Shown piece by piece: positions 23,901 through 35,900 of a DNA stretch of 64,000 bases (positions are counted from its first letter, which is position 1; every line of letters starts with the position of its first letter). Source of the DNA: Mizuhopecten yessoensis (taxonomy: Eukaryota). The notes below the pieces were generated by a model. The model was not told the origin of the DNA. It did no database searches and saw nothing but the letters and a program-made list of their open reading frames with translations. The position numbers and the translations under genes were made by a program. The stretch is from the NCBI RefSeq assembly GCF_002113885.1, contig NW_018408909.1:130922-194921 (forward strand), given 5' to 3'.

Positions 23901-26900
23901 TTTATTAGCAATGGAAGGCAAGATCACCAGTGAGCACATTGACTGTGTTTGGGCTTCTAGTCAGGTAGGTTATCTAGACTTATGTGTTATGATGTATGCT
24001 TGTTACGATACTCACCATTACAATCAGCTCCTCAGGAGAGATGTTTTCAGGCAGGATGTGAAGGGTAGAAACACCTGTGCTGAGAGCTCAGCCTTGTAGA
24101 TCAATGACAGTGACGCAGTTTTTACAGTGTCAGAAATTATAAGTTAGAGCCACTGTAAATATGAAAACAAATCAAAATGTTTGTATTTGTGAATATCATA
24201 TTTCTACAATTGAATAAAAATAAAACTTGAGTGAATGTAAGAATAGCATTTTATATAATCTTGTGTGCTTTGATCTCTGAAATGCAAGATCCATTATTAT
24301 AAGCTGATTATCAGTTGAAGCACTAGTAAACAACTGTTTGTTGTGATGATGTTGCATTGATTTGATTTGGTTGTTTCATTTGAAGCATTTGGTTTTATTG
24401 TTTCAGTTGAAGCATTGTAGTAAACAAGTGTATGACATCCTGATCCCACTGATCAAGAATCTTGATGTCCATCCGGTGCAGCATCTACTCAGACTTGTGT
24501 CCGCACTGGAACCCACCTCACACACAGAATCTGTAAGACCACTTTCCTTTACTGATTAGGATAGTTTCCTGGGTCTAGTGACTGAAGATAGTATTTTGGC
24601 AACTTTGTTAAGTTAATATTTGAGCAACTTGGTTAGGTTATAGAGTGTAAAAATCCACTAGTCAAAAGCCGAACTCCGGTAAATTTTATAACAGTTTGTG
24701 GAAATTTACAGTGTTTACTATGAAAATATAGCCCAGACAAGTAGATCTATTCTAAATCTGCCTGTGGGATTAATCATATAATTTGTTTACAGACGTTGTA
24801 CCTTGCCTCTGCCCTGATCAAGTGTATTTGGAACACGTGTGTAGCGTCCCAGACCTCTGTGTCACAGCACCACGCCCACGCACAGGCCCAGTACACTGCT
24901 CTACAGCAGGATGAGGACATGCACGAAGGTAGGAAGCACTTAACTTGTAATGTTTTAGAAACCTCTTCAATTTTATACCTTAACTTGATGTCAAAAATAT
25001 TGGATAACCTCTTTATTTGTAGGTAAGGATCAGCAGTTGTTTTGTTGTATGTTGAAATTGTATACCAAATACATAATGCAAAATTGCACATGCAATTAGA
25101 TTGATTTAAATAGTAAAGCACGCAAGGAAAGGTAGAGTTTGTCTATTTTGTTACCAATAACAAACTTTTATTAAATTTGGAAATTGGGGTATTTATTTTG
25201 AGGGACATAATGCTTTAATAAATAGAATTGACCGTTACAGTTTATGTGTTGTCAGGTGAAGGGAAAGCTGGCAAGCACGAGATGAGTAGTAGTGAGAGTA
25301 TCCAGATGTCTGAGGATGGAGAGAGTGAAAAGTGCTGTAACAAGGTAAGACATACATGTAAATAATACACAGACGAGTATGTCTACCAGCTAACTCCTGA
25401 TGTTGATACAATACTGAACATTGATTTAGTTGATTTTGATCAGAAAAAGAGATGAAATAACTATAACTGATGTATATATTTTTCTGCATTCTGTACAATT
25501 TCAGCCTAAATTACAATCCCAGAAAAGAGGAAGTCCCGCTAAAAAGACGCCAAGGAGTAAAGACCAAATCCAGAAGGTCAAAGACAGTCAGCATGAAAAA
25601 CACATGGACGATGTGGACTCTGAGGGTCTACATGGTCACAGTGGTGACAGCGAACTTGATCACAGTGGTGAGTCAGATGACCACAGGCATGTTCATCGTC
25701 ATCCAATTCGCCATCCCCGGCGTGATAGTGAGGCGAGTGACAGTGAGATTGATGGCAGCGAGTCTAGTGAGGATGAGGAACTAGAGGAAGGAGAGGTGGC
25801 TGATAGCAGGCACCGCCAACAATTGCTCCAGGCCCACCGCCGGGCCGTAGCCAAGTACCACTGCAACCACCACCACGCACACCACCATGACACGTCAGAG
25901 GAAGAAGAGGAAGAGGAGGAGGAAGATGACTCAGAATACCTAGAGGACTCTGAAGATGAGGAACTTCTAAAGGAAGCCAAACTGGTTCACATGAAGCATA
26001 CTTGTCAGGACAGTGAGGGAAGTTCCGATTTTGAGGATGAGGCTCGGATGGTCCATGAGGGGAAAATGTCATACCAAATGGCCCAGAGGATTCTCAGGAA
26101 ACACCACCAACAGCAGCAGAGAATACTACACCAGGCACACCAGCTGGCCCTCCAGAGTCAACAGAAGGTCAGGAGGCGAGGTGAACGACCCAAGGATCAA
26201 GGGCAGAGGAAGGTGAAGTCAGGTGAAGATCAACCAGAGGCCAGTGAGGAAGATAAGGGGGAGGACAAAGATGCTAGTCAGGAGCTTGTCAAACAGGAGG
26301 ACCTTGCTAACACCTCCCTGGTAAGTGGTCATTTATAGTTGCATAAAAGAAACTGGGAAATGCCTCAATTAATGCAACTGATATTTAATTTTAAATAACT
26401 TTAAGGATTTAGGAAGTCTGTGAATATTTGAGATTGCCATTAATGATGATTTAAATCATGCTATCATAAGTGAAGCCTACCTCAACTTTAAAAAGAAGAG
26501 AGAAAATGAAAATGATACCAGCTATTGATCTATGGTGGAAATGAAAAGTCCAATGCAAGAAATGAGATCGATTGTATCTATTTGACAGGAGTCCATTGAG
26601 TCCGATGTGGCCATGCACGGTGGGAGTCAGGACAGTGGACTGGAGCAGGCTGAGGGAGGCCACTCCCCTGGAGGTCTCACCCCAGGACAAGAGACTGAGA
26701 TATTTGACTGTTCCTCATTCATACAGCAAGTGGGAGTACAGCGCCAGAGGCAGAGACACATACAGGGGTAACTGTTGTGCTATCACTTTATCTCTCAAAA
26801 TAGATATGTTGACTTGGAGATTAAGAAGGATAGGGAATAGAAAGGTTTAGTTTCTTGAGAAAAGTTAGTTTTGCTGAGGCAAAGATAAGCTCCAATTTCC

Positions 26901-29900
26901 TGATCTGAGAAAAATCACGAAAATTATCCTAATGTGTTTGGAACAACCAGTATTCGGGTGAACAATTTCAAATTCTGGACCTTTGCCTGAAGAGTAATCT
27001 CTCCATCTTTGTGGTTTGTTGATGTGTGCTGATCTGACATCAATGAAACTATTAACTGACAAACACAAATATGTTCTGGCTTATATAAAGCTGTGAACTG
27101 GGACATATTGTACTATGTACCAGCTCATACTGAATCCTGTAGGTTTCTAGCGGGATGAATATATTTAATAACTGCTTCAGTAGAGACTAAGATGATGAAA
27201 ACAATTTCCAAAGAACCAATTTCTTGTCAATGTCCTGTGATGATACCATCCTTGCGCACACAGTATTACTGTCTGGTGGTCTGACCTCCAGTCCGTAATG
27301 TGACGATTATTAGGGACACTCGGCCATAGTCAAGTGGACTAGGGTTGGGTCACTGAGGACACAGTATAATCATTTCACATTTTGATAAATTTGATAGTTA
27401 TTTTACAAGTGATTGAGATTGAAGTTTATTCACTGGTCATATAACTTCTTTTTTTTAAACCCAACTAGATTTGGTATTATTAGGGCTTCATTTGCAAATA
27501 TGAATATATAGAAGACAAATTTTAGTAATATATGTGTGTTAGAGTCTAAAATAATATCAATGAGAAGAGGAGAACAAATACTGTTAGTGATGGGGATCAC
27601 AAAATGTGCCCCACTGCTTCCTTCAATATTAAAATCTGAAATATAAACCAGTAGATAATTAACTCTGTATAATATGTGATGTAATGCAGCACAACAATGC
27701 ACACCTGACATTTAAAGACTCGCCAATCCTTACCGGCTAACAAATTTTGTATATCAATGTGATAACCATCTTACATGTAAGAATGTTGACTTACAGCCGA
27801 GAGTACATCGAGAACATCATGAGTCCTGACGATGGTGAGGGCAGCTGTCATAGTTCACACATCAGCACCAAATCAGAGAAGAACATGGCTGACTTTGAGG
27901 GCGAGGACTTCATCAGTGACGAAGAACTGGCTCAGATCGATGCCAGCCGCTCCTTCAATCCTCACCAGATGCAGCAACACCTGTCCAGTCTGGCCTCCAT
28001 GTACCACACACACATGCCACACGGTCAGTGGCAACAACTGTCTCTGGAAATGAATTTTTAGATGATTTATTTTTACTTTATGCAGTGTGTTAAAATAAAC
28101 ACAAAAATTATAGTGAAATTTCAAACTTTGAAAGTGTTCTGTACATAAGTCAAATGATTTGTTCTCGTTGGTTTTGACAAAAATAATAAGTGGTCTCTCT
28201 TTTGGAGATTAATATTTGAGACTTAGATAATAAAGTTGGTTATAGTTTGTTGTGTGTTACAGTGATCCACCACCGCCCCCAGCAAAAAGAGATGTTCCCT
28301 TGCCACCCTTCCGACTTCCCATTTGATGATGTGTGTGGTAAAGGAAACACATTGCTGTGGGATCTGGTCCAGGAGGAAACAGCAGTGAGTTCAATTTCTA
28401 AGTAGTAAATCCATTTAATACTCATTAAATTGAGAAATGTCATTGATACAGATATCATTATACTGTGAAACCATTTTTAAAGAAGCTCATAGGTTTTTTT
28501 AAGTTTGAAAATCCAGTAGGACACATAAGCATTAAGTTTGCATCTAAAAAAAGTTAGGGCATATAGGTAGGCCTTTTGGTCTATGATGAGTTTATCATGC
28601 ATTGTTATTTACAACAGAGTTAAAAGTGCTTGATTGATTTGAATTTTCAGCATATGTTACCGGAGGGTCTAGCCATGGAGGCAGAGAAAGCACTGTGTAC
28701 CCTGGTATGCTATTCTACAGACAGGAAAATCAAGATGAAGTTTATTGAAGCCTCCATAGAAAATCTCTCCCAAAACAAATCTGTTGTGGTATCTCTTCGG
28801 CTCCTGCAAAAAATATTCAGTTCCTTTCAACCATACAGGAGTGGTGCAGATACACACCATGTCACCATGTAAGTCTAATAAAGATGTCATTGTTATCTAA
28901 CACGACTGAAATAATTGAACTTAAAGGCATTGTGGTGATTTTAATAACACTAGCAAACAGTTTTTAGCTCACCTGGCCCGAAGGGCCAAGTGAGCTTATG
29001 CGATGGTGCAGCGTCTGTCGTCCATCCGTCCGCCGTCCGGTGTCAATATTTTACTTTAAACAACTTCTTCTTAATAACCAAAAGGCCTAGGGTGATGATA
29101 TTTGGCCAGAAGCAAACCAGGATGAAGGGCTACCAAGTTTGTTCAAATAAATTACCTTCACCTATTTTCAAGGTCACAAGGGTCAAATATGTTAAAAACT
29201 TTAAACAACTTCTTCTGAATAACCAAAATGCCCAGAGTGATGATTTTTGGCTAGTAGCATGCTGGGATAAAGGGCTACCAAGTTTGTTCAAATGAATGAC
29301 CTTCGTCCATTTTCAAGGTCACAGGGGTCAATTGTCTTAAAAAATCTTTATACGACTTGTTCTGAATTACTAAGAGGCCTAGGATGATGATATTTGGCCA
29401 GTAGCATGCTGAGATGAAGGTGTACCAAGTTTGTTCAAATGAGTGACCTTGACTTATATTCAAGGTCACAGGGGTCAAATATGTTAAAAACCCTTAAACA
29501 ACTTCTTCTGCATAACTAAGAGGCCTAGGGTTAAGGTATTTGACCAGTAGCATGCTGGGATGAAGGGCTACCTAGTTTGTTCAAATGAATGATCTTGACT
29601 TATATTCAAGGTCACAGGGGTCAAATATGTTAAAAACCTTTGAACAACTTCTTCTGAATAACTAAGAGGCATAGGGTTACAATATTTGGCCAGTAGCATG
29701 CTGTGATTAAACGCTACCAAGTTTGTTCAAATGAATGACCTTCGTCCATTTTCAAGGTCACAGGGGTCAATTGTCTTAACAAATCTTTAAACAACTTCTT
29801 CTGAATAATTTAGAAGCCTAGGATAATGATATTTGGCCAGTAACATGCCAGGATGAAGGGCTATCAAGTTTGTTCAAATGAATGACCTTTACATATATTC

Positions 29901-32900
29901 AAGGTCACAGGGGTCAAATATGTTTAAAACCTTTAAACGACTTCTTCTCAATAACCAAAAGGCCTAGGATGATGCTATTTGGCCAGCAGCATGCTGGGAC
30001 AAAGGGCAACCAAGTTTATTCAAATGAATGATCTTAAATTATATTCAACGTCACTGGGGTCAAATATGTTTAAAACTTTTATACAACTTCTTCTGAATAA
30101 CCAAGAGGCCTAGGATAATGATATTTGGCCAGTAGCATGCTGGGATAAAGGGCTATCAAGTTTGTTCAAATGAATGACCTTTACATATATTCAAGGTCAC
30201 AGGGGTCAAATATGTTTAAAACCTTTAAACGACTTCTTCTAAATTAGCCAAAGGCCAAGGGTGATGATATTTGGTCATTAACAGGCTGGGATGAAGGGCT
30301 ACCAATTTTGTCAAAATGAATGACCTTTGCCCATATTCAAGGTCACAGTGGTCAATATATGTTTAAATCTTTAAATGACTTGTTCTGTATAACCAANTTT
30401 AAACGACTTCTTCTAAATTAGCCAAAGGCCAAGGGTGATGATATTTGGTCATTAACAGGCTGGGATGAAGGGCTACCAATTTTGTCAAAATGAATGACCT
30501 TCGCCCATACTCAAGGTCACAGTGGTTAATATATGTTTAAATCTTTAAATGACTTGGTCTGTATAACCAATAGGTCCAGGGTTATGATATTTTGCCAAAA
30601 GCATGCTGGGTTGGAAGACTTTAAACTCTGTTCAACCTAATGTCCTTGTTCGACATTCAAGGTCACAGGCGTCATATGTTAAAATCTTTTAATAGGTTCT
30701 TATGAATCAAACACTGATATTCTGCCTGTAGCTGTATTTTATTCCACTTTTAAGATTACAAGTGTCAGATTAATACCCGGTGAGCGATTCAGGCCCATTG
30801 GGCCTCTTGTTTCTTCAAATTTTTGTGGTCGGTAATTGAGAAAAACTTTTTTAAAAAAATCTTCTACATGAACAAATAATTTAATAAATCTGTTTAATTT
30901 GATAATAAATTAATTTGTGAAAAAAATACATGTTTTAATCTAATGACTTTAAATGCAGGTGGGCTGAAAAGGAGCTGCATATGATGAGTCACTTCTTCAT
31001 CAACCTAGTGTACTACACAGAGGCGATACAGGCAGGCAACACCGCCATCACAGCAATGTAAGTTGGCTTAGAACCTCTTAAATCTGCTGAATAGTGTCAT
31101 TCTTCTATAATTGCGGATTATCTCAATTATCACTCATGATGAGATCCAGTGAGTTAATCGGCAATCTCCAAGTCTGGTTGTCTCAGCCTGTTGATGACTT
31201 ATTGGTTATTTTATAATAAAGTTTTACTCTGATTGTCAAACAAACCTCTTGTCATGTTGATACATCACAGTAACATCGTCATGTATATCTAATATAAGCT
31301 GCATCATTAATATCATTTGACATATCGTTTTTTGTGTTTAATATTTATTAACTCCACCTATCATGTATTAAGGAAATACTATTCTTTTTTCCCTCTTTTT
31401 ACCTAGGTACTGCCACAAAGAACAGGTGCAAGTGAGACTTGATTTCTTGACGTGTGTATTTTCGGCTATGGGATCTCCAGATGGATTTAGTAAGTTTCTT
31501 GAAAAGAAGTTTATAAGGTAACCTTTGTCTTTAAAAAAGATAGTTTTAAAACAAAGATTGCTGTTTATTCTTTTATCCACTGTATAGCATGAAATTTTCG
31601 TATTTAACATAGCTGCAGTTGAATTATGCATTTGTATATCAATATGTGTACAACATAGCTGATTCAATTCAGACAGCTAAACAAGAAAGCTTGTATCATC
31701 AAATTGTTTTGTAAACATGGAAACATATATAAAACATGAAAGCATGTATTCCCAAATGTTTCTAGGGTATAAATGTGATAAATCTGTAAACACCATTTTT
31801 GTCTGTCCTGTGATGAAACCATCCTTGCGCACACAGTATTATGGTCTGGTGGTCTGACCTCCAGTCTGTAATGTGACGATTATTAGGGACGCTCGGCCAT
31901 TGTCAAGTGGACCATGGTTGGGTCACTGAGGACAATACCTGTAGAAATGAAGAGAACATAAAATGTATCTTCAAATTATCTTATATTCATCACACGATTC
32001 AAACTTCTGATGAAACACATGACATACTATACATATGTCTGATACTTTTGTGAGCAAATTAATTTGCATGTTTTACGTCCTTTATTTCCTGTAAATAAGA
32101 ATTGTATGCTTCAAATAATTTGTCACCAAGATATGAAATATGTGATCAGAATGTTCTAGTCATAAGATGGAACATGTGACAAATATTTCACTGTTCACTG
32201 TAATCTATGAGAAAGATCTTTGAGAAATTTGTACCTTTCTTTTAACTGTGATTTCCTGTCCATGTCCTGTGATGAAACCATCCTTGCGCACACAGTATTA
32301 TGGTCTGGTGGTCTGACCTTCTGACCTCCAGTCCGTAATGTGACGATTATTAGGGTCGCTCGGCCTGGGTCAAGTGGACCAGAATCGGGTCACTGAGGAC
32401 AATACCTGTAGAAATGAAAAGAACATAAAATTTATCTTCAAATTATCTTATATTCATCACACGATTCAAACTTCTGATGAAACACATGACATACTATACA
32501 TATGTCTGATACTTTTGTGAGCAAATTAATTTGCATGTTTTACATCCTTTATTTCCTGTAAATAAGAATTGTATGCTTCAAATAGTTTGTCACCAAGATA
32601 TGAAATATGTGATCAGAATGTTCTAGTCATAAGATGGAACATGTGACAAATATTTCACTGTTCACTGTAATCTATGAGAAATTTGTACCTTTCTTTTAAA
32701 TGTGATTTCTTGTCCATGTCCTGTGATGAAACCATCCTTGCGCACACAGTATTACTGTCTGGTGGTTTGACCTTCAGTCCGTAATGTGACGATTATTAGG
32801 GACGCTCTGTCATGGTCAAGTGGACTAGGACTGGGTCACTGAGGACAATTTTTGGATAATTTCATGTTGATTATCAACCAAAGAATAATTAACAGCACAA

Positions 32901-35900
32901 TGCCGTTGGAATATAAATCCCAGAAGAATGCTAAATATACCATTAAAAATTATGCTGTCTTTATTTCTGAGGGTGTGTTTGAGAATAGTGTAGGGAAAAT
33001 ATCACTATTTTATCTCTGGATGTAAAACAAAATTGTCACTAAGCAATATCAAAACATGAATTAATCTTTCAGGAAATAATAGCTGAGATTGAACTAATTT
33101 TTCATTGTGTAGGGTTGAACTTGGAGCAAGTAGACACGCTGTGGCGCTGTATAGCTTTGGACATAGAGTGCTCTGATGAGTGTCTCAAGTGGTTCCTCAA
33201 CCAGGCAAAGAGTAAAGACCACCACGCTATGGGCCTGGAAACATTTAAACACATCTTCTTGGAAAAGGTAGGAATTGTTCATGCTTAACACATCTTCTTG
33301 GAAAAGGCAGTGATTGATTTAAAGTTTATTTGACATATAAAAACTAAGAAAGGAAACAGAAGGAATTTCAAGCAATATAGCAATGTATTAATCTTTAATG
33401 GATGAACTTGTTCATGTTGTTTTCATTGGGTATTGTTAAGTATGGTATATGCAAGGTTCACTGTATTGGTAAAATAAAGAGTTATCTTTCTTTATCAGTC
33501 TTTATTGAAACAAAGCTAATGAATAGGGATATTAATAGTATATTAACGCTAGCTACATATATCCATGGTACTTAACCCTAACTGTGAGTATACAATTTCT
33601 ACAGATGCCTCAACTGAAGCCGGAATCCATGAGTATGATTGGGCTCAACCTGTTCCAACAGTTATCACACCTGACTAGGATTGCCAATGCATCCCTCGAT
33701 AAATCCCTTACAGAAGATCAGGTAAAAGTTCATTAAATACTAATAAAGATTAAAAGTTGTTCTGATTTTGAATTTCACTATTTAATGACGTAATATATTC
33801 ACATTTAGATGGATCTTTTTTTTAGTTTTTAGGTCATTAATTTTCTGGTATTAGAAATAAATCGTAATACATATTGAACCCGTTCTGCTTGAAAGTTAAA
33901 AAATACTCCAAACAGTAGGTTGACTCCAAACAGGTGATGCTATGTGTATGGAAGTTTGTTTTATCACTCAATACAACGTTTCCTCCTGTGTTTGTCGCAG
34001 GTCTGTGGTATGGACCAGCTGTGGAATATGGCCCTTAAGGCCACCAACACGGATGTCAGTATTACAGCCATACAGATCCTCAACAGTTACTACATCAACT
34101 ACGGCAACAGTCAGCTGGAGAAAGAGGAGGAGTTTGTACAGCGCTGTATGGACAGCCTTGTCCAGGCTCTGTCAGATCTCAACCAGGTAATGCCTGTTCA
34201 CTAATATTTTGAAGGCCATTGCATAAGAATTCTTGAGGATTTTCAAATTTATTCTGCTATAAGTTTAGCTGAACGCTTCTTAAAAGAAGATGGATTATTT
34301 ATTTAAAGCAAAACTTTTTAATTCAATCTAAACATGCCGAAACGACATGCTTATGTAATGCTACATATTTCAATATTTTTTGTAAATAAATTTCCTCACC
34401 CTCAAATATTTCAATTTGATATTCCTTCTTAGAATCCAGATACCAATTTACTAGTCATTCAAAGAGGTTTGGTGCTATTGAAAAACCACCTGGAAGCGTT
34501 CAGGAAACGGTATGCCTACCATTTACGTAACTGGCAGATAGATGGGAAGGGAATCCGCAGTCATCAGCGTTCCATCCACGACAAACAATCATCTATGATG
34601 AGAGTTATTCTACAGCCTGCAGGCATGACTGACAAGGTTTGTTTACAACATATTTAAGTGTTAATGTTTTTGTCTTTTCTATGCCACACATATATTTGTT
34701 AATGAGAGCACTAAATGTAATGCATAAGATTAATAATGTATAACAAAGATTTTTTATTTTTTTTATACCTCTAGATATGTTTCATTTTGATTTAATACTA
34801 AGATTTGATTAGGAATTCAGATATCTTGTGAGCATTTATTCATTAACAAAGACAGGGGATGCATCTAAATGCTCAATCATTTAAAAAATTGAAATATTTG
34901 TATATAGGTCGTTCAAAGGGCAGTCCCACGATATAAGTATTTATGTATTGAATATTTACTCTTTTGATTGAGTGATACTAAGTAAATTATTTTTAACATT
35001 AAGAATATAAACTATGTAAGTTATCAGTTATGAAAATAATTTTCCAAGAAAAATTTGTTACAGACCCAGTTAGAGATGTCATCAACAGACCTGGTGGCAG
35101 AGCTACGTGCAGAGGTGACACGGTGGTGGGAGGGGCTACACAAACAACAGCTGGCCCGACACCAGGCAGAGGGTGCCCACAGCAGCACCATGCTCTCGCC
35201 GATACTTGGTGCCATGCTGGGTGATGGCCCTATTCGTATGATCACCCTTGGACAAGATCTTACAGTAGACATGGACGAGAAATCACTTGGAGATATGCAG
35301 TTCAAAGACATGCAGGTACTTATTGTTTGGTATGAAATGTATGACTGAAGAACTAATTTTGATACACTTTTTTTTCTGGGGACTTGTTGGGGCTGATAAT
35401 GGGCCCCATGCCCAATTGAAACTATTTCATATTTGTACCACATTCCCCAAATTTGCAGATTAGTCCCACTGGTATATTTCCTTCCAAGGATGAGACAAAA
35501 AGGCCCGATTCCCAAATTAACCAAACAAAACTGATATATTCTACTTACACAATAAAATGTTTAATCTTAAATGCTTAAAATGTTAAGCTTCACTGTCCTC
35601 CGATTTCTATGAAATGGCGAGAACTTCTGTGATTTGGTAGATGATAGACTTATATGGTAATATAATGTTTCGCAGTAAATATGATACGTGGAAGCTCATC
35701 AAACATTTTATGTACACAATTCATTAATTCAGAGTTAATAGGGCTTTAAAATTATCAGTTTGTTTTGTTTTAGCGACACTCTGTATGACACAAGTTTTCT
35801 ACATTACAGCTGGTGTTTGTATCAGTGGGTGCCAGTAGACCTCAGCGTAAGATGGACGGCAGTATCCCCTCCTCCTGTCTGCCAGCACCCTCCCACAGCA

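What the first reader, a model, noticed from the sequence alone, without database searches (positions are those of the whole stretch)
31804..32847. Three snoRNAs in one intron: potential sno-lncRNAs or polycistronic processing
Seen: copies 2-4 all lie in intron 20 (31490-33112), separated by two near-identical ~320-bp spacers in which I see no exon. Established: animal intronic snoRNAs are usually one per intron, and two in one intron can give sno-lncRNAs capped by a snoRNP at each end because exonucleases trim only from outside. Inference: the intron would yield a stable ~1.04-kb RNA with three U6-antisense modules unless it is cleaved internally. The spacers differ by only a few substitutions and one 13-bp indel, whereas the RNA copies differ at many 3'-hairpin positions. 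This hints at gene conversion or hairpin diversification.
Basis: partly seen in the sequence, partly recalled or inferred. Interest (0 to 1): 0.72.

Follow-up and report, generated by a model that had tools for sequence, protein, structure and literature searches.

The report
Three U6-guide snoRNA genes, one intron
One intron of a scallop-like animal's gene holds three tandem copies of a small guide RNA gene aimed at the spliceosome's U6 RNA, and public RNA data hint that the stretches between the copies survive as a longer RNA. The layout is already known from flies and rice and is reported from other introns of this genome.

Summary
Three box C/D RNA genes (31804-31934, 32263-32401, 32717-32847) lie in one GT..AG intron (31490-33112). 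Spliced RNA reads and transcript contigs join 31489 to 33113, and no joint falls inside the intron. The two spacers differ at 6 of 315 sites plus a 13-bp indel. The RNAs differ at 9-13 of 131 sites, nearly all in a 31-nt 3' hairpin whose pairing is mostly kept.

Each RNA carries a perfect 12-nt complement to nucleotides 64-75 of this genome's own U6. This is the interaction published for mammalian SNORD23 (U6-Am70), but the Rfam score is far below that family's cut-off.

The sno-lncRNA idea is partly supported.
- In one RNA run, spacer contigs reach exon-like depth (22-120), against 0-5.6 for the flanking intron.
- In a second run they reach about 5% of exon depth.
- In a third run, reads also cover the intron outside the outer copies.

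RNA ends, size and stability remain unknown.

Earlier notes of this scan, on other DNA of this genome and not checked here, report tandem snoRNA arrays in single introns of other genes. If they hold, internal cutting probably exists. I rate this a new member of a known kind, of moderate interest.

The parts
   Evidence: Joints 31057->31407 and 31489->33113, both GT..AG, in RNA reads and contigs
31490..33112 (+). the single intron that holds all three copies (1623 nt)
   Evidence: Joint 31489->33113 skipping 1623 nt in X23, X1 and X2. No internal joints were listed
31804..31934 (+). box C/D RNA copy A (131 nt). It has C box GUGAUGA, D box CUGA and a 5-bp terminal stem UGUCC/GGACA. It starts 314 nt after the 5' splice site
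   Evidence: 165 bits to model R1
31820..31831 (+). 12-nt antisense to U6 nt 64-75 in copy A. The same element lies at 32279-32290 in B and 32733-32744 in C
   Evidence: Pattern search. U6 genes of this genome were found with RF00026 and read
31935..32262 (+). spacer S1 (328 nt). AT-rich, no unusual fold, unique to this locus
32208..32220 (+). 13 bp present in S1 and absent from the reference S2. They lie between 7-nt direct repeats TGAGAAA. Run X1 has them in its S2
   Evidence: table 4: put in behind 32674
32263..32401 (+). box C/D RNA copy B (139 nt). An 8-nt tandem duplication (32312-32319) sits in the loop of the internal hairpin. The reference allele has three mismatches in the 3' hairpin
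   Evidence: X1/X2 alleles at 32367, 32383 and 32384 restore a perfect 10-bp stem
32402..32716 (+). spacer S2 (315 nt)
   Evidence: RNA contigs of depth 22-111 in X2
32717..32847 (+). box C/D RNA copy C (131 nt), ending 265 nt before the 3' splice site
33113..33267 (+). downstream coding exon
   Evidence: Joint at 33113, and loose ends at 33267 that carry the next exon (tables 5 and 7)
27231..27361 (+). copy 1 of the same RNA family, alone in an upstream part of the gene. It lies outside the finding and was used for comparison
   Evidence: A haplotig of it lies on contig C79092

Best explanation
This is a young tandem cluster of three box C/D snoRNA genes in one host-gene intron. The genes are functional analogues of SNORD23, predicted to guide 2'-O-methylation of U6 at A70.

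Origin (inferred): the array has three RNAs and two spacers, with unrelated flanks. That shape points to unequal crossing-over between two older copies. Continuing exchange then keeps the spacers and the 5' halves of the RNAs nearly identical.

RNA products (partly shown, partly inferred): after splicing, exonucleases trim the intron from both ends and stall at snoRNPs. Spacer-containing RNAs bounded by snoRNPs therefore persist above the level of the rest of the intron. Candidate species are A-S1-B-S2-C (1044 nt), A-S1-B (598 nt) and B-S2-C (585 nt). They may be sno-lncRNA-like end products or long-lived intermediates on the way to mature 131-139-nt snoRNAs.

Shown here: the anatomy, the single intron, RNA contigs joining snoRNA to spacer, and excess spacer depth in one run.

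Inferred: snoRNP capping, the RNA ends, stability and the methylation target.
For: Anatomy:
- Array and unit structure.
- C and D boxes and the terminal stem are identical in all three copies. There are no differences at RNA positions 1-38, 70-85 or 117-131.

Target:
- A 12-nt perfect complement to nt 64-75 of this genome's best U6 gene.
- Published chimeric reads link SNORD23 to U6, with D' positioning at Am70 (PMC11863803; PMC5389715).
- The best sub-threshold Rfam hit is SNORD23, over the same element.

Intron: single intron, no internal exon (table 5).

Spacer RNA:
- X2 spacer and B contigs have depth 22-120. Exons have 38-67 and flanking intron 0-5.6.
- X1 has 3-5.8 over the region between the copies, and 0 for the flanking intron.
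- X23's only intron reads lie on S1 to B.
- Contigs bridge A/S1, B/S2 and S2/C.

Other:
- The spacer occurs nowhere else in the assembly.
- Fourteen probable RNA runs (their type is a guess) from seven studies hold 23-41% of the words of 31400-33270. The exons make up only about 13% of that stretch.
- Flanks outside the array are unrelated to the spacer.
Against: - Contig word depth is a poor measure of expression. Words shared by S1 and S2 double the apparent depth.
- In X2, nothing was laid on the 3' hairpin of A or the first 70 nt of S1, and the 3' half of C has depth only 4.65. A full-length 1044-nt species is therefore not demonstrated there.
- X2's contig starts at 31804, but that point is also a de Bruijn branch point, so it is not an RNA end.
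- In X1 the spacers are at only about 5% of exon depth.
- X24 raw reads extend about 150 nt upstream of A and about 250 nt downstream of C. That fits a whole excised intron better than a snoRNP-trimmed RNA.
- Library types of X1 and X2 are not on record.
- Earlier notes of this scan report 8-14-copy arrays elsewhere in this genome (not checked here). If they hold, efficient internal cutting exists.
Confidence: 0.55

Rival explanations
1. This is an ordinary polycistronic intronic snoRNA cluster. The spliced intron or the pre-mRNA is cut inside the spacers by an endonuclease and trimmed to three separate mature snoRNAs. The spacer RNA seen is only pre-mRNA, lariat or short-lived intermediate, and no stable long species exists.
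For: - Earlier notes of this scan report tandem arrays of 8-14 snoRNAs in single introns of RPS6, TCP1, DDX39 and RPL10 in this genome (not re-tested). Such arrays would be useless without internal cutting.
- Intronic clusters that yield individual snoRNAs are described in Drosophila (cited in PMC5932544) and in plants and yeast (PMC10557570).
- X1 spacer depth is only about 5% of exon depth.
- In human cells only a minority of snoRNA pairs in one intron give detectable sno-lncRNAs (PMC4234469).
Against: - In X2 the spacer contigs are 4-20 times deeper than the flanking intron contigs of the same run.
- The spacer shows no exceptional structure that would mark a cleavage signal (z -0.76).
Confidence: 0.33
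2. The whole excised intron, linear or lariat, is unusually stable, like a stable intronic sequence RNA. The stability does not depend on snoRNP caps.
For: All 19 laid X24 raw reads fall at about 31650-33100, including 150 nt upstream of A and 250 nt downstream of C. None falls on the exons or the neighbouring introns.
Against: - X1 and X2 show zero or low depth on the intron outside the array.
- X24 has few reads, and 18 of 19 are only 95-99% alike.
- The tool drops human-like reads, so missing exon reads are not a finding.
Confidence: 0.08
3. The triplication is an assembly artefact or a private structural variant of the reference animal.
For: - The assembly is fragmented (82,659 contigs).
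- Alleles differ between animals, and reference B carries three private changes.
Against: - Contigs from two unrelated studies carry B-specific sequence (the 8-nt insertion) joined to S2, A joined to S1, and a spacer joined to C (table 8).
- DNA-type runs hold 60-65% of the words.
Confidence: 0.03

Closest known systems
Mammalian sno-lncRNAs (SNORD116 region of the Prader-Willi locus; RPL13A, GAS5 and SNHG29 examples)
   Same: - Two or more box C/D snoRNAs lie in one spliced intron.
- The internal sequence is expected to be shielded by terminal snoRNPs.
- Here the spacer RNA exceeds the flanking intron in one run (PMC4234469, PMC11028025).
- One UGCAUG (Fox-type) motif per spacer, which is within chance.
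   Different: - Three modules rather than two, with one internal.
- The animal is an invertebrate and the host gene is protein-coding.
- The guides target U6 and are not orphans.
- RNA ends, lack of poly(A), snoRNP dependence and any protein sponge role are all untested here.
Intronic snoRNA gene clusters of Drosophila and rice, and the tandem arrays noted in other introns of this same genome
   Same: - Several same-strand copies of one snoRNA in a single intron, made by tandem duplication.
- They are presumably released from one precursor.
   Different: - Only three copies.
- The RNA targets a spliceosomal snRNA, not rRNA.
- The RNA copies are more diverged than the spacers. This is the reverse of the 'invariant cores, diverging spacers' pattern noted for the DDX39 array.
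SNORD23 (Rfam RF00603)
   Same: - 5' stem, C box and the element ACCAUCCUUGC directly after the C box.
- Complementarity to the U6 region that includes A70, read from a degenerate D' box.
   Different: - It scores 22 bits against a gathering score of 64.
- The middle and 3' parts do not align.
- From memory, the human gene sits in NOP53, not USP34.
- Here the complementarity is longer (12 nt, U64-G75).

Membership tests
box C/D snoRNA | C box RUGAUGA near the 5' end and D box CUGA near the 3' end, brought together by a short terminal stem | tested here: met
   All copies have GUGAUGA at RNA positions 7-13, CUGA at 123-126, and the stem UGUCC/GGACA with 5 of 5 pairs
box C/D snoRNA | An antisense element of at least 10 nt ending next to a D or D' box, so that the target is paired to the 5th nucleotide upstream | tested here: inconclusive
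   There is a 12-nt perfect match to U6 nt 64-75. A70 is placed correctly only if the degenerate CACA (positions 27-30) serves as D'. The perfect CUGA at 51-54 lies in a hairpin loop 22 nt further on
box C/D snoRNA | Accumulates as a discrete ~130-nt RNA bound by fibrillarin, NOP56, NOP58 and SNU13 | not testable with these tools
   Standard RNA-seq contigs cover the units, but they give no size and no protein partners
SNORD23 (RF00603) | Reaches the Rfam gathering score | tested here: not met
   21.5-22.3 bits against 64. Nothing in the window reaches any family's gathering score
SNORD23 (RF00603) | 5' antisense element pairing with U6 around A70 | tested here: met
   The published interaction is in PMC11863803 and PMC5389715
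sno-lncRNA | Two or more snoRNA genes within one spliced intron | tested here: met
   Joint 31489->33113. Three copies lie inside
sno-lncRNA | The sequence between the snoRNAs accumulates above the flanking intron in RNA-seq | tested here: inconclusive
   X2 says yes: 22-120 against 0-5.6. X1 is weak: 3-5.8 against 0, with exons at 60-73. In X24 the reads also cover the flanks
sno-lncRNA | Ends coincide with the snoRNA ends, there is no cap or poly(A), and formation depends on the snoRNP | not testable with these tools
   Contigs cannot show ends. No pile-up of read starts or ends was reported (table 6)
intronic snoRNA gene cluster (polycistronic) | Several same-strand snoRNA genes in one intron | tested here: met
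intronic snoRNA gene cluster (polycistronic) | Individual mature snoRNAs are released by cuts in the spacers | not testable with these tools
   No small-RNA or size-resolved data were available. The spacer fold is unremarkable

The most novel reading that the evidence does not exclude
The intron yields a stable snoRNP-ended long RNA (0.6-1.04 kb) carrying two or three U6-antisense modules. That would be the first sno-lncRNA documented outside mammals. It could act as a multivalent tether or sponge for U6 or its chaperones, rather than only as a snoRNA precursor. The fast-changing but structure-preserving 3' hairpin would give each module a distinct partner.
Probability: 0.2. Interest if true: 0.6.

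Novelty: new member of a known kind. Interest (0 to 1): 0.4.

Why it matters
sno-lncRNAs have been documented only in primates and mouse, and they are species-specific. An invertebrate case in a genome that appears rich in intronic snoRNA arrays would allow a direct test. The question is whether snoRNP-capped intron fragments are a general by-product of having several snoRNAs per intron, or a regulated class of RNA.

The locus also gives an invertebrate counterpart of the recently proposed SNORD23-U6 Am70 guide. That supports an old origin for the interaction.

Finally, the RNA hairpin diverges faster than the adjacent non-coding spacer, and the array is small enough for this pattern to be dissected.

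If only mature snoRNAs are made, this is one more ordinary tandem snoRNA cluster.

Tried and rejected
- **Rfam at gathering thresholds over the whole window:** no match. With E-values, only sub-threshold SNORD23. Hits to mir-345, SNORD121A, scaDm46E3 and ZNRD1-AS1 have E of 0.9-9 and were treated as chance.
- **Metagenome scan for the C box plus antisense pattern:** two hits, both in GC-rich sequence with no snoRNA features around them. They are chance matches.
- **Further family members in this genome:** BLAST and covariance model R1 find only the four copies and a haplotig of copy 1.
- **X2 contig starting at 31804:** I first took it as evidence for a defined 5' end. I rejected that, because A's flank diverges from the flanks of B and C exactly there, and an assembly graph would break at that point regardless.
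- **Spacer as a decayed snoRNA copy, or array flanks as old spacer copies:** no alignment beats shuffles.
- **Cleavage hairpin in the spacer:** the fold is no better than shuffles.
- **B as a simple A/C recombinant:** rejected. Even with the commoner allele, B keeps 6 differences from A, 5 of them in the hairpin.
- **CpG decay as the cause of hairpin divergence:** by eye, few of the changes are CpG transitions.
- **Whole-molecule duplex prediction with U6:** it gave implausible global pairings and was ignored, apart from the 12-nt match.
- **Not done:**
  - The host gene name (USP34) was not verified. I ran no protein search and no search of joined exons.
  - A second read-laying run was not available.

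Full report
**1. Observation**

The window holds a short tandem array at 31804-32849 (Tandem Repeats Finder: period about 467, 2.3 copies, 90% matches). Its units each begin with a ~131-nt conserved block. A fourth copy of that block lies 4.5 kb upstream (repeat finder family D3). The 21-nt string made of the C box plus the following antisense element occurs four times on the + strand, against 0.00 expected from shuffles.

I call the copies:
- A: 31804-31934
- B: 32263-32401
- C: 32717-32847
- copy 1: 27231-27361

The spacers are S1 (31935-32262, 328 nt) and S2 (32402-32716, 315 nt). They differ by six substitutions and one 13-bp indel. The RNA blocks differ at 9 sites (A-B), 12 (A-C) and 12-13 (B-C) of 131, and B has an 8-nt tandem duplication.

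**2. What the unit is**

Every copy has these features:
- GUGAUGA at RNA positions 7-13
- CUGA at positions 123-126
- a 5-bp terminal stem, UGUCC/GGACA
- an internal C'-like GUGACGA
- two internal hairpins

With the structure I named, 92% of cells pair, against 28-45% when the partners are slid. Three pairs in the 3' hairpin change on both sides. With only four sequences the shuffle control is weak (38-102 of 500 shuffles reach the observed values).

Rfam finds nothing at gathering scores. The best sub-threshold match is SNORD23, at 22 bits against a gathering score of 64. That match rests on the 5' stem, the C box and ACCAUCCUUGC.

I located this genome's own U6 genes with RF00026; the best scores 118 bits. 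RNA positions 17-28 are a perfect 12-nt complement of U6 nucleotides 64-75.

Two papers report chimeric reads between SNORD23 and U6. The later one places the degenerate D' box so that U6-Am70 is the target (PMC5389715; PMC11863803). The same register works here if CACA (positions 27-30) serves as D'. The perfect CUGA at 51-54 sits in the loop of the internal hairpin, so the D' assignment stays open.

I therefore read the RNA as a box C/D snoRNA that works like SNORD23. It does not pass that family's membership score.

BLAST and a covariance model built from the four copies find no other member in the 988-Mb assembly, apart from a haplotig of copy 1.

**3. One intron, three real copies**

I laid two raw RNA runs and two probable transcriptome assemblies on 31000-33500. 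The result was a GT..AG joint 31489->33113 skipping 1623 nt. It appears in a raw read of X23, in a 10.8-kb spliced contig of X1 (depth 72.8), and in X2. A second joint, 31057->31407, was also found. No joint inside the intron was listed, so no cryptic exon is visible in these data.

Contigs from unrelated studies carry A joined to S1 (31818-31995). They also carry B with its 8-nt insertion joined to S2 (32290-32462), and a spacer joined to C (32507-32800). The triplication is therefore not an assembly artefact. The spacer occurs only at these two places in the assembly, so spacer RNA must come from this intron.

**4. Is the spacer kept in RNA?**

Depths per run:

| Run | Spacers and B | Exons | Flanking intron |
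|---|---|---|---|
| X2 | 22-120 | 38-67 | 0-5.6 |
| X1 | 3-5.8 | 60-73 | 0 |

- X2: an unspliced contig that runs from C into the next exon has depth 5.58.
- X23: its only intron reads lie on the end of S1 and the start of B.
- Fourteen probable RNA runs (their type is a guess) from seven studies hold 23-41% of the words of 31400-33270, although the exons make up only about 13% of that stretch.

This is the pattern expected if snoRNPs stop exonucleases and the intervening RNA persists.

The caveats are serious:
- Word depth of contigs is a poor measure of expression, and words shared by S1 and S2 count twice.
- X2 shows nothing on the 3' hairpin of A or the first 70 nt of S1, and only 4.65 on the 3' half of C. 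The abundant species there could be B-S2-C or a 3'-extended B rather than the full 1044 nt. Allelic divergence could also hide parts of it.
- The X2 contig that starts at 31804 proves nothing about an RNA end, because an assembly graph must branch at that point.
- The 19 reads of X24 all lie in the intron but extend beyond A and C. That looks like a whole excised intron. The missing exon reads cannot be interpreted, because the tool drops human-like reads.
- The library types of X1 and X2 are not on record.

**5. How the array evolves**

Among A, B and C there is no difference at RNA positions 1-38 (stem, C box, antisense), at 70-85 (the C' region) or at 117-131 (the D box end). Of the nine A-B differences, eight lie in positions 86-116. 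That gives P about 2e-6 for a uniform spread over unit 1 against unit 2. For that 31-nt region (8 of 31 sites) against the spacers (6 of 315), Fisher's P is 3e-6.

That region is a 10-bp stem with an invariant AAGUG loop. The stem is kept through changes such as C-G to U-A, A-U to U-G, and A-U to G-U to G-C.

Reference copy B breaks three pairs. The allele seen in both X1 and X2 (32367 T, 32383 G, 32384 G) gives a perfect stem and lowers the A-B count to six.

Other animals exchange letters between repeats:
- In X1, the spacer next to C carries the S1 forms of the 13-bp indel and of sites 32700 and 32710.
- In X24, copy C carries A-type letters at 32774 and 32780.

The array has three RNAs and two spacers, and its outer flanks show no similarity to the spacer. 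I infer unequal crossing-over between two older copies, followed by continuing conversion. This homogenises the spacers and the invariant RNA parts.

Why the hairpin stays a divergence island is not explained. Candidate causes, all from general knowledge and untested, are:
- selection for distinct hairpins;
- conversion tracts that stop at the diverged core;
- template-switch mutation in a quasi-palindrome.

**6. Comparison with what is known**

sno-lncRNAs need two snoRNAs in one intron. So far they are described in human, rhesus and mouse. Only a minority of eligible snoRNA pairs give detectable products: seven sno-lncRNAs from 48 paired snoRNAs in H9 cells (PMC4234469; review PMC11028025).

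Several snoRNAs per intron is not exceptional outside vertebrates. Multiple intronic clusters are described in Drosophila (Huang et al. 2004 and 2005, cited in PMC5932544). Polycistronic units cut by RNase III are standard in yeast and plants (PMC10557570).

Earlier notes of this scan report tandem arrays in single introns of other genes of this same genome (RPS6, TCP1, DDX39, RPL10), with six or more copies each and up to 14 in RPS6. I did not re-test these notes. If they hold, this animal must have a way to cut such precursors, which favours the ordinary-cluster reading.

What is particular here:
- the U6 target;
- the small, recently homogenised array, in which the RNA is more diverged than the spacer;
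- the first RNA hint that the spacer outlasts the rest of the intron.

**7. Verdict**

The cluster and its single intron are certain. Spacer-containing RNA is present and, in one run, enriched. A discrete snoRNA-ended long RNA is not demonstrated.

I put 0.55 on snoRNP-bounded spacer RNAs persisting, as products or as long-lived intermediates. I put 0.33 on a fully processed ordinary cluster. Small weights go to a stable whole intron and to an artefact.

The organism is a scallop according to earlier notes of the scan. From memory, the assembly size and contig count fit the Yesso scallop; this is not verified.

Noticed in passing
window 29054-30677: A satellite of about 146-bp units (9-11 copies, 83-97% matches, with a higher-order period of about 439) lies between copy 1 and the three-copy intron. 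The unit contains a GGTGATGA string.
   Followed up: no
L005 (G000:C79092:198-1789) against window 25571-27322: A small contig is a 97-99% identical haplotig of the copy 1 region. It lacks 155 bp (window 26955-27109) and ends inside copy 1. The reference therefore carries both haplotypes of this stretch.
   Followed up: partly
window 32007-32042 and 32474-32509: Each spacer holds a miniature C/D-like pair, CUGAUGA followed 25 nt later by CUGA. Rfam SNORD121A touches it at E = 5.2. It is too short for a snoRNA and has no significant similarity to the RNA copies.
   Followed up: partly
window 32065-32070 and 32532-32537: There is one UGCAUG (Fox-family binding motif) per spacer. One per 328 nt is within chance, but this is the motif that mammalian Prader-Willi sno-lncRNAs carry in numbers.
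   Followed up: no
window 32312-32327: Copy B duplicates the 8-nt TCTGACCT, so it carries two CUGA motifs in the loop of the internal hairpin. The duplication is present in transcript contigs of other animals, so it is tolerated or fixed.
   Followed up: partly
window 31650-33100, run X24: In one 2026 RNA run, all 19 laid reads fall inside this intron and 18 of them are only 95-99% identical to the reference. This points to a divergent haplotype or population, with an intron RNA that outlasts the mRNA in that sample.
   Followed up: no
L009, L010 and other U6 loci of G000: Of the seven U6-like loci, the second-best (L009) has the snoRNA target changed (UGCAACAGGAUG). It is probably a U6 pseudogene or variant that this guide would not recognise.
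   Followed up: no
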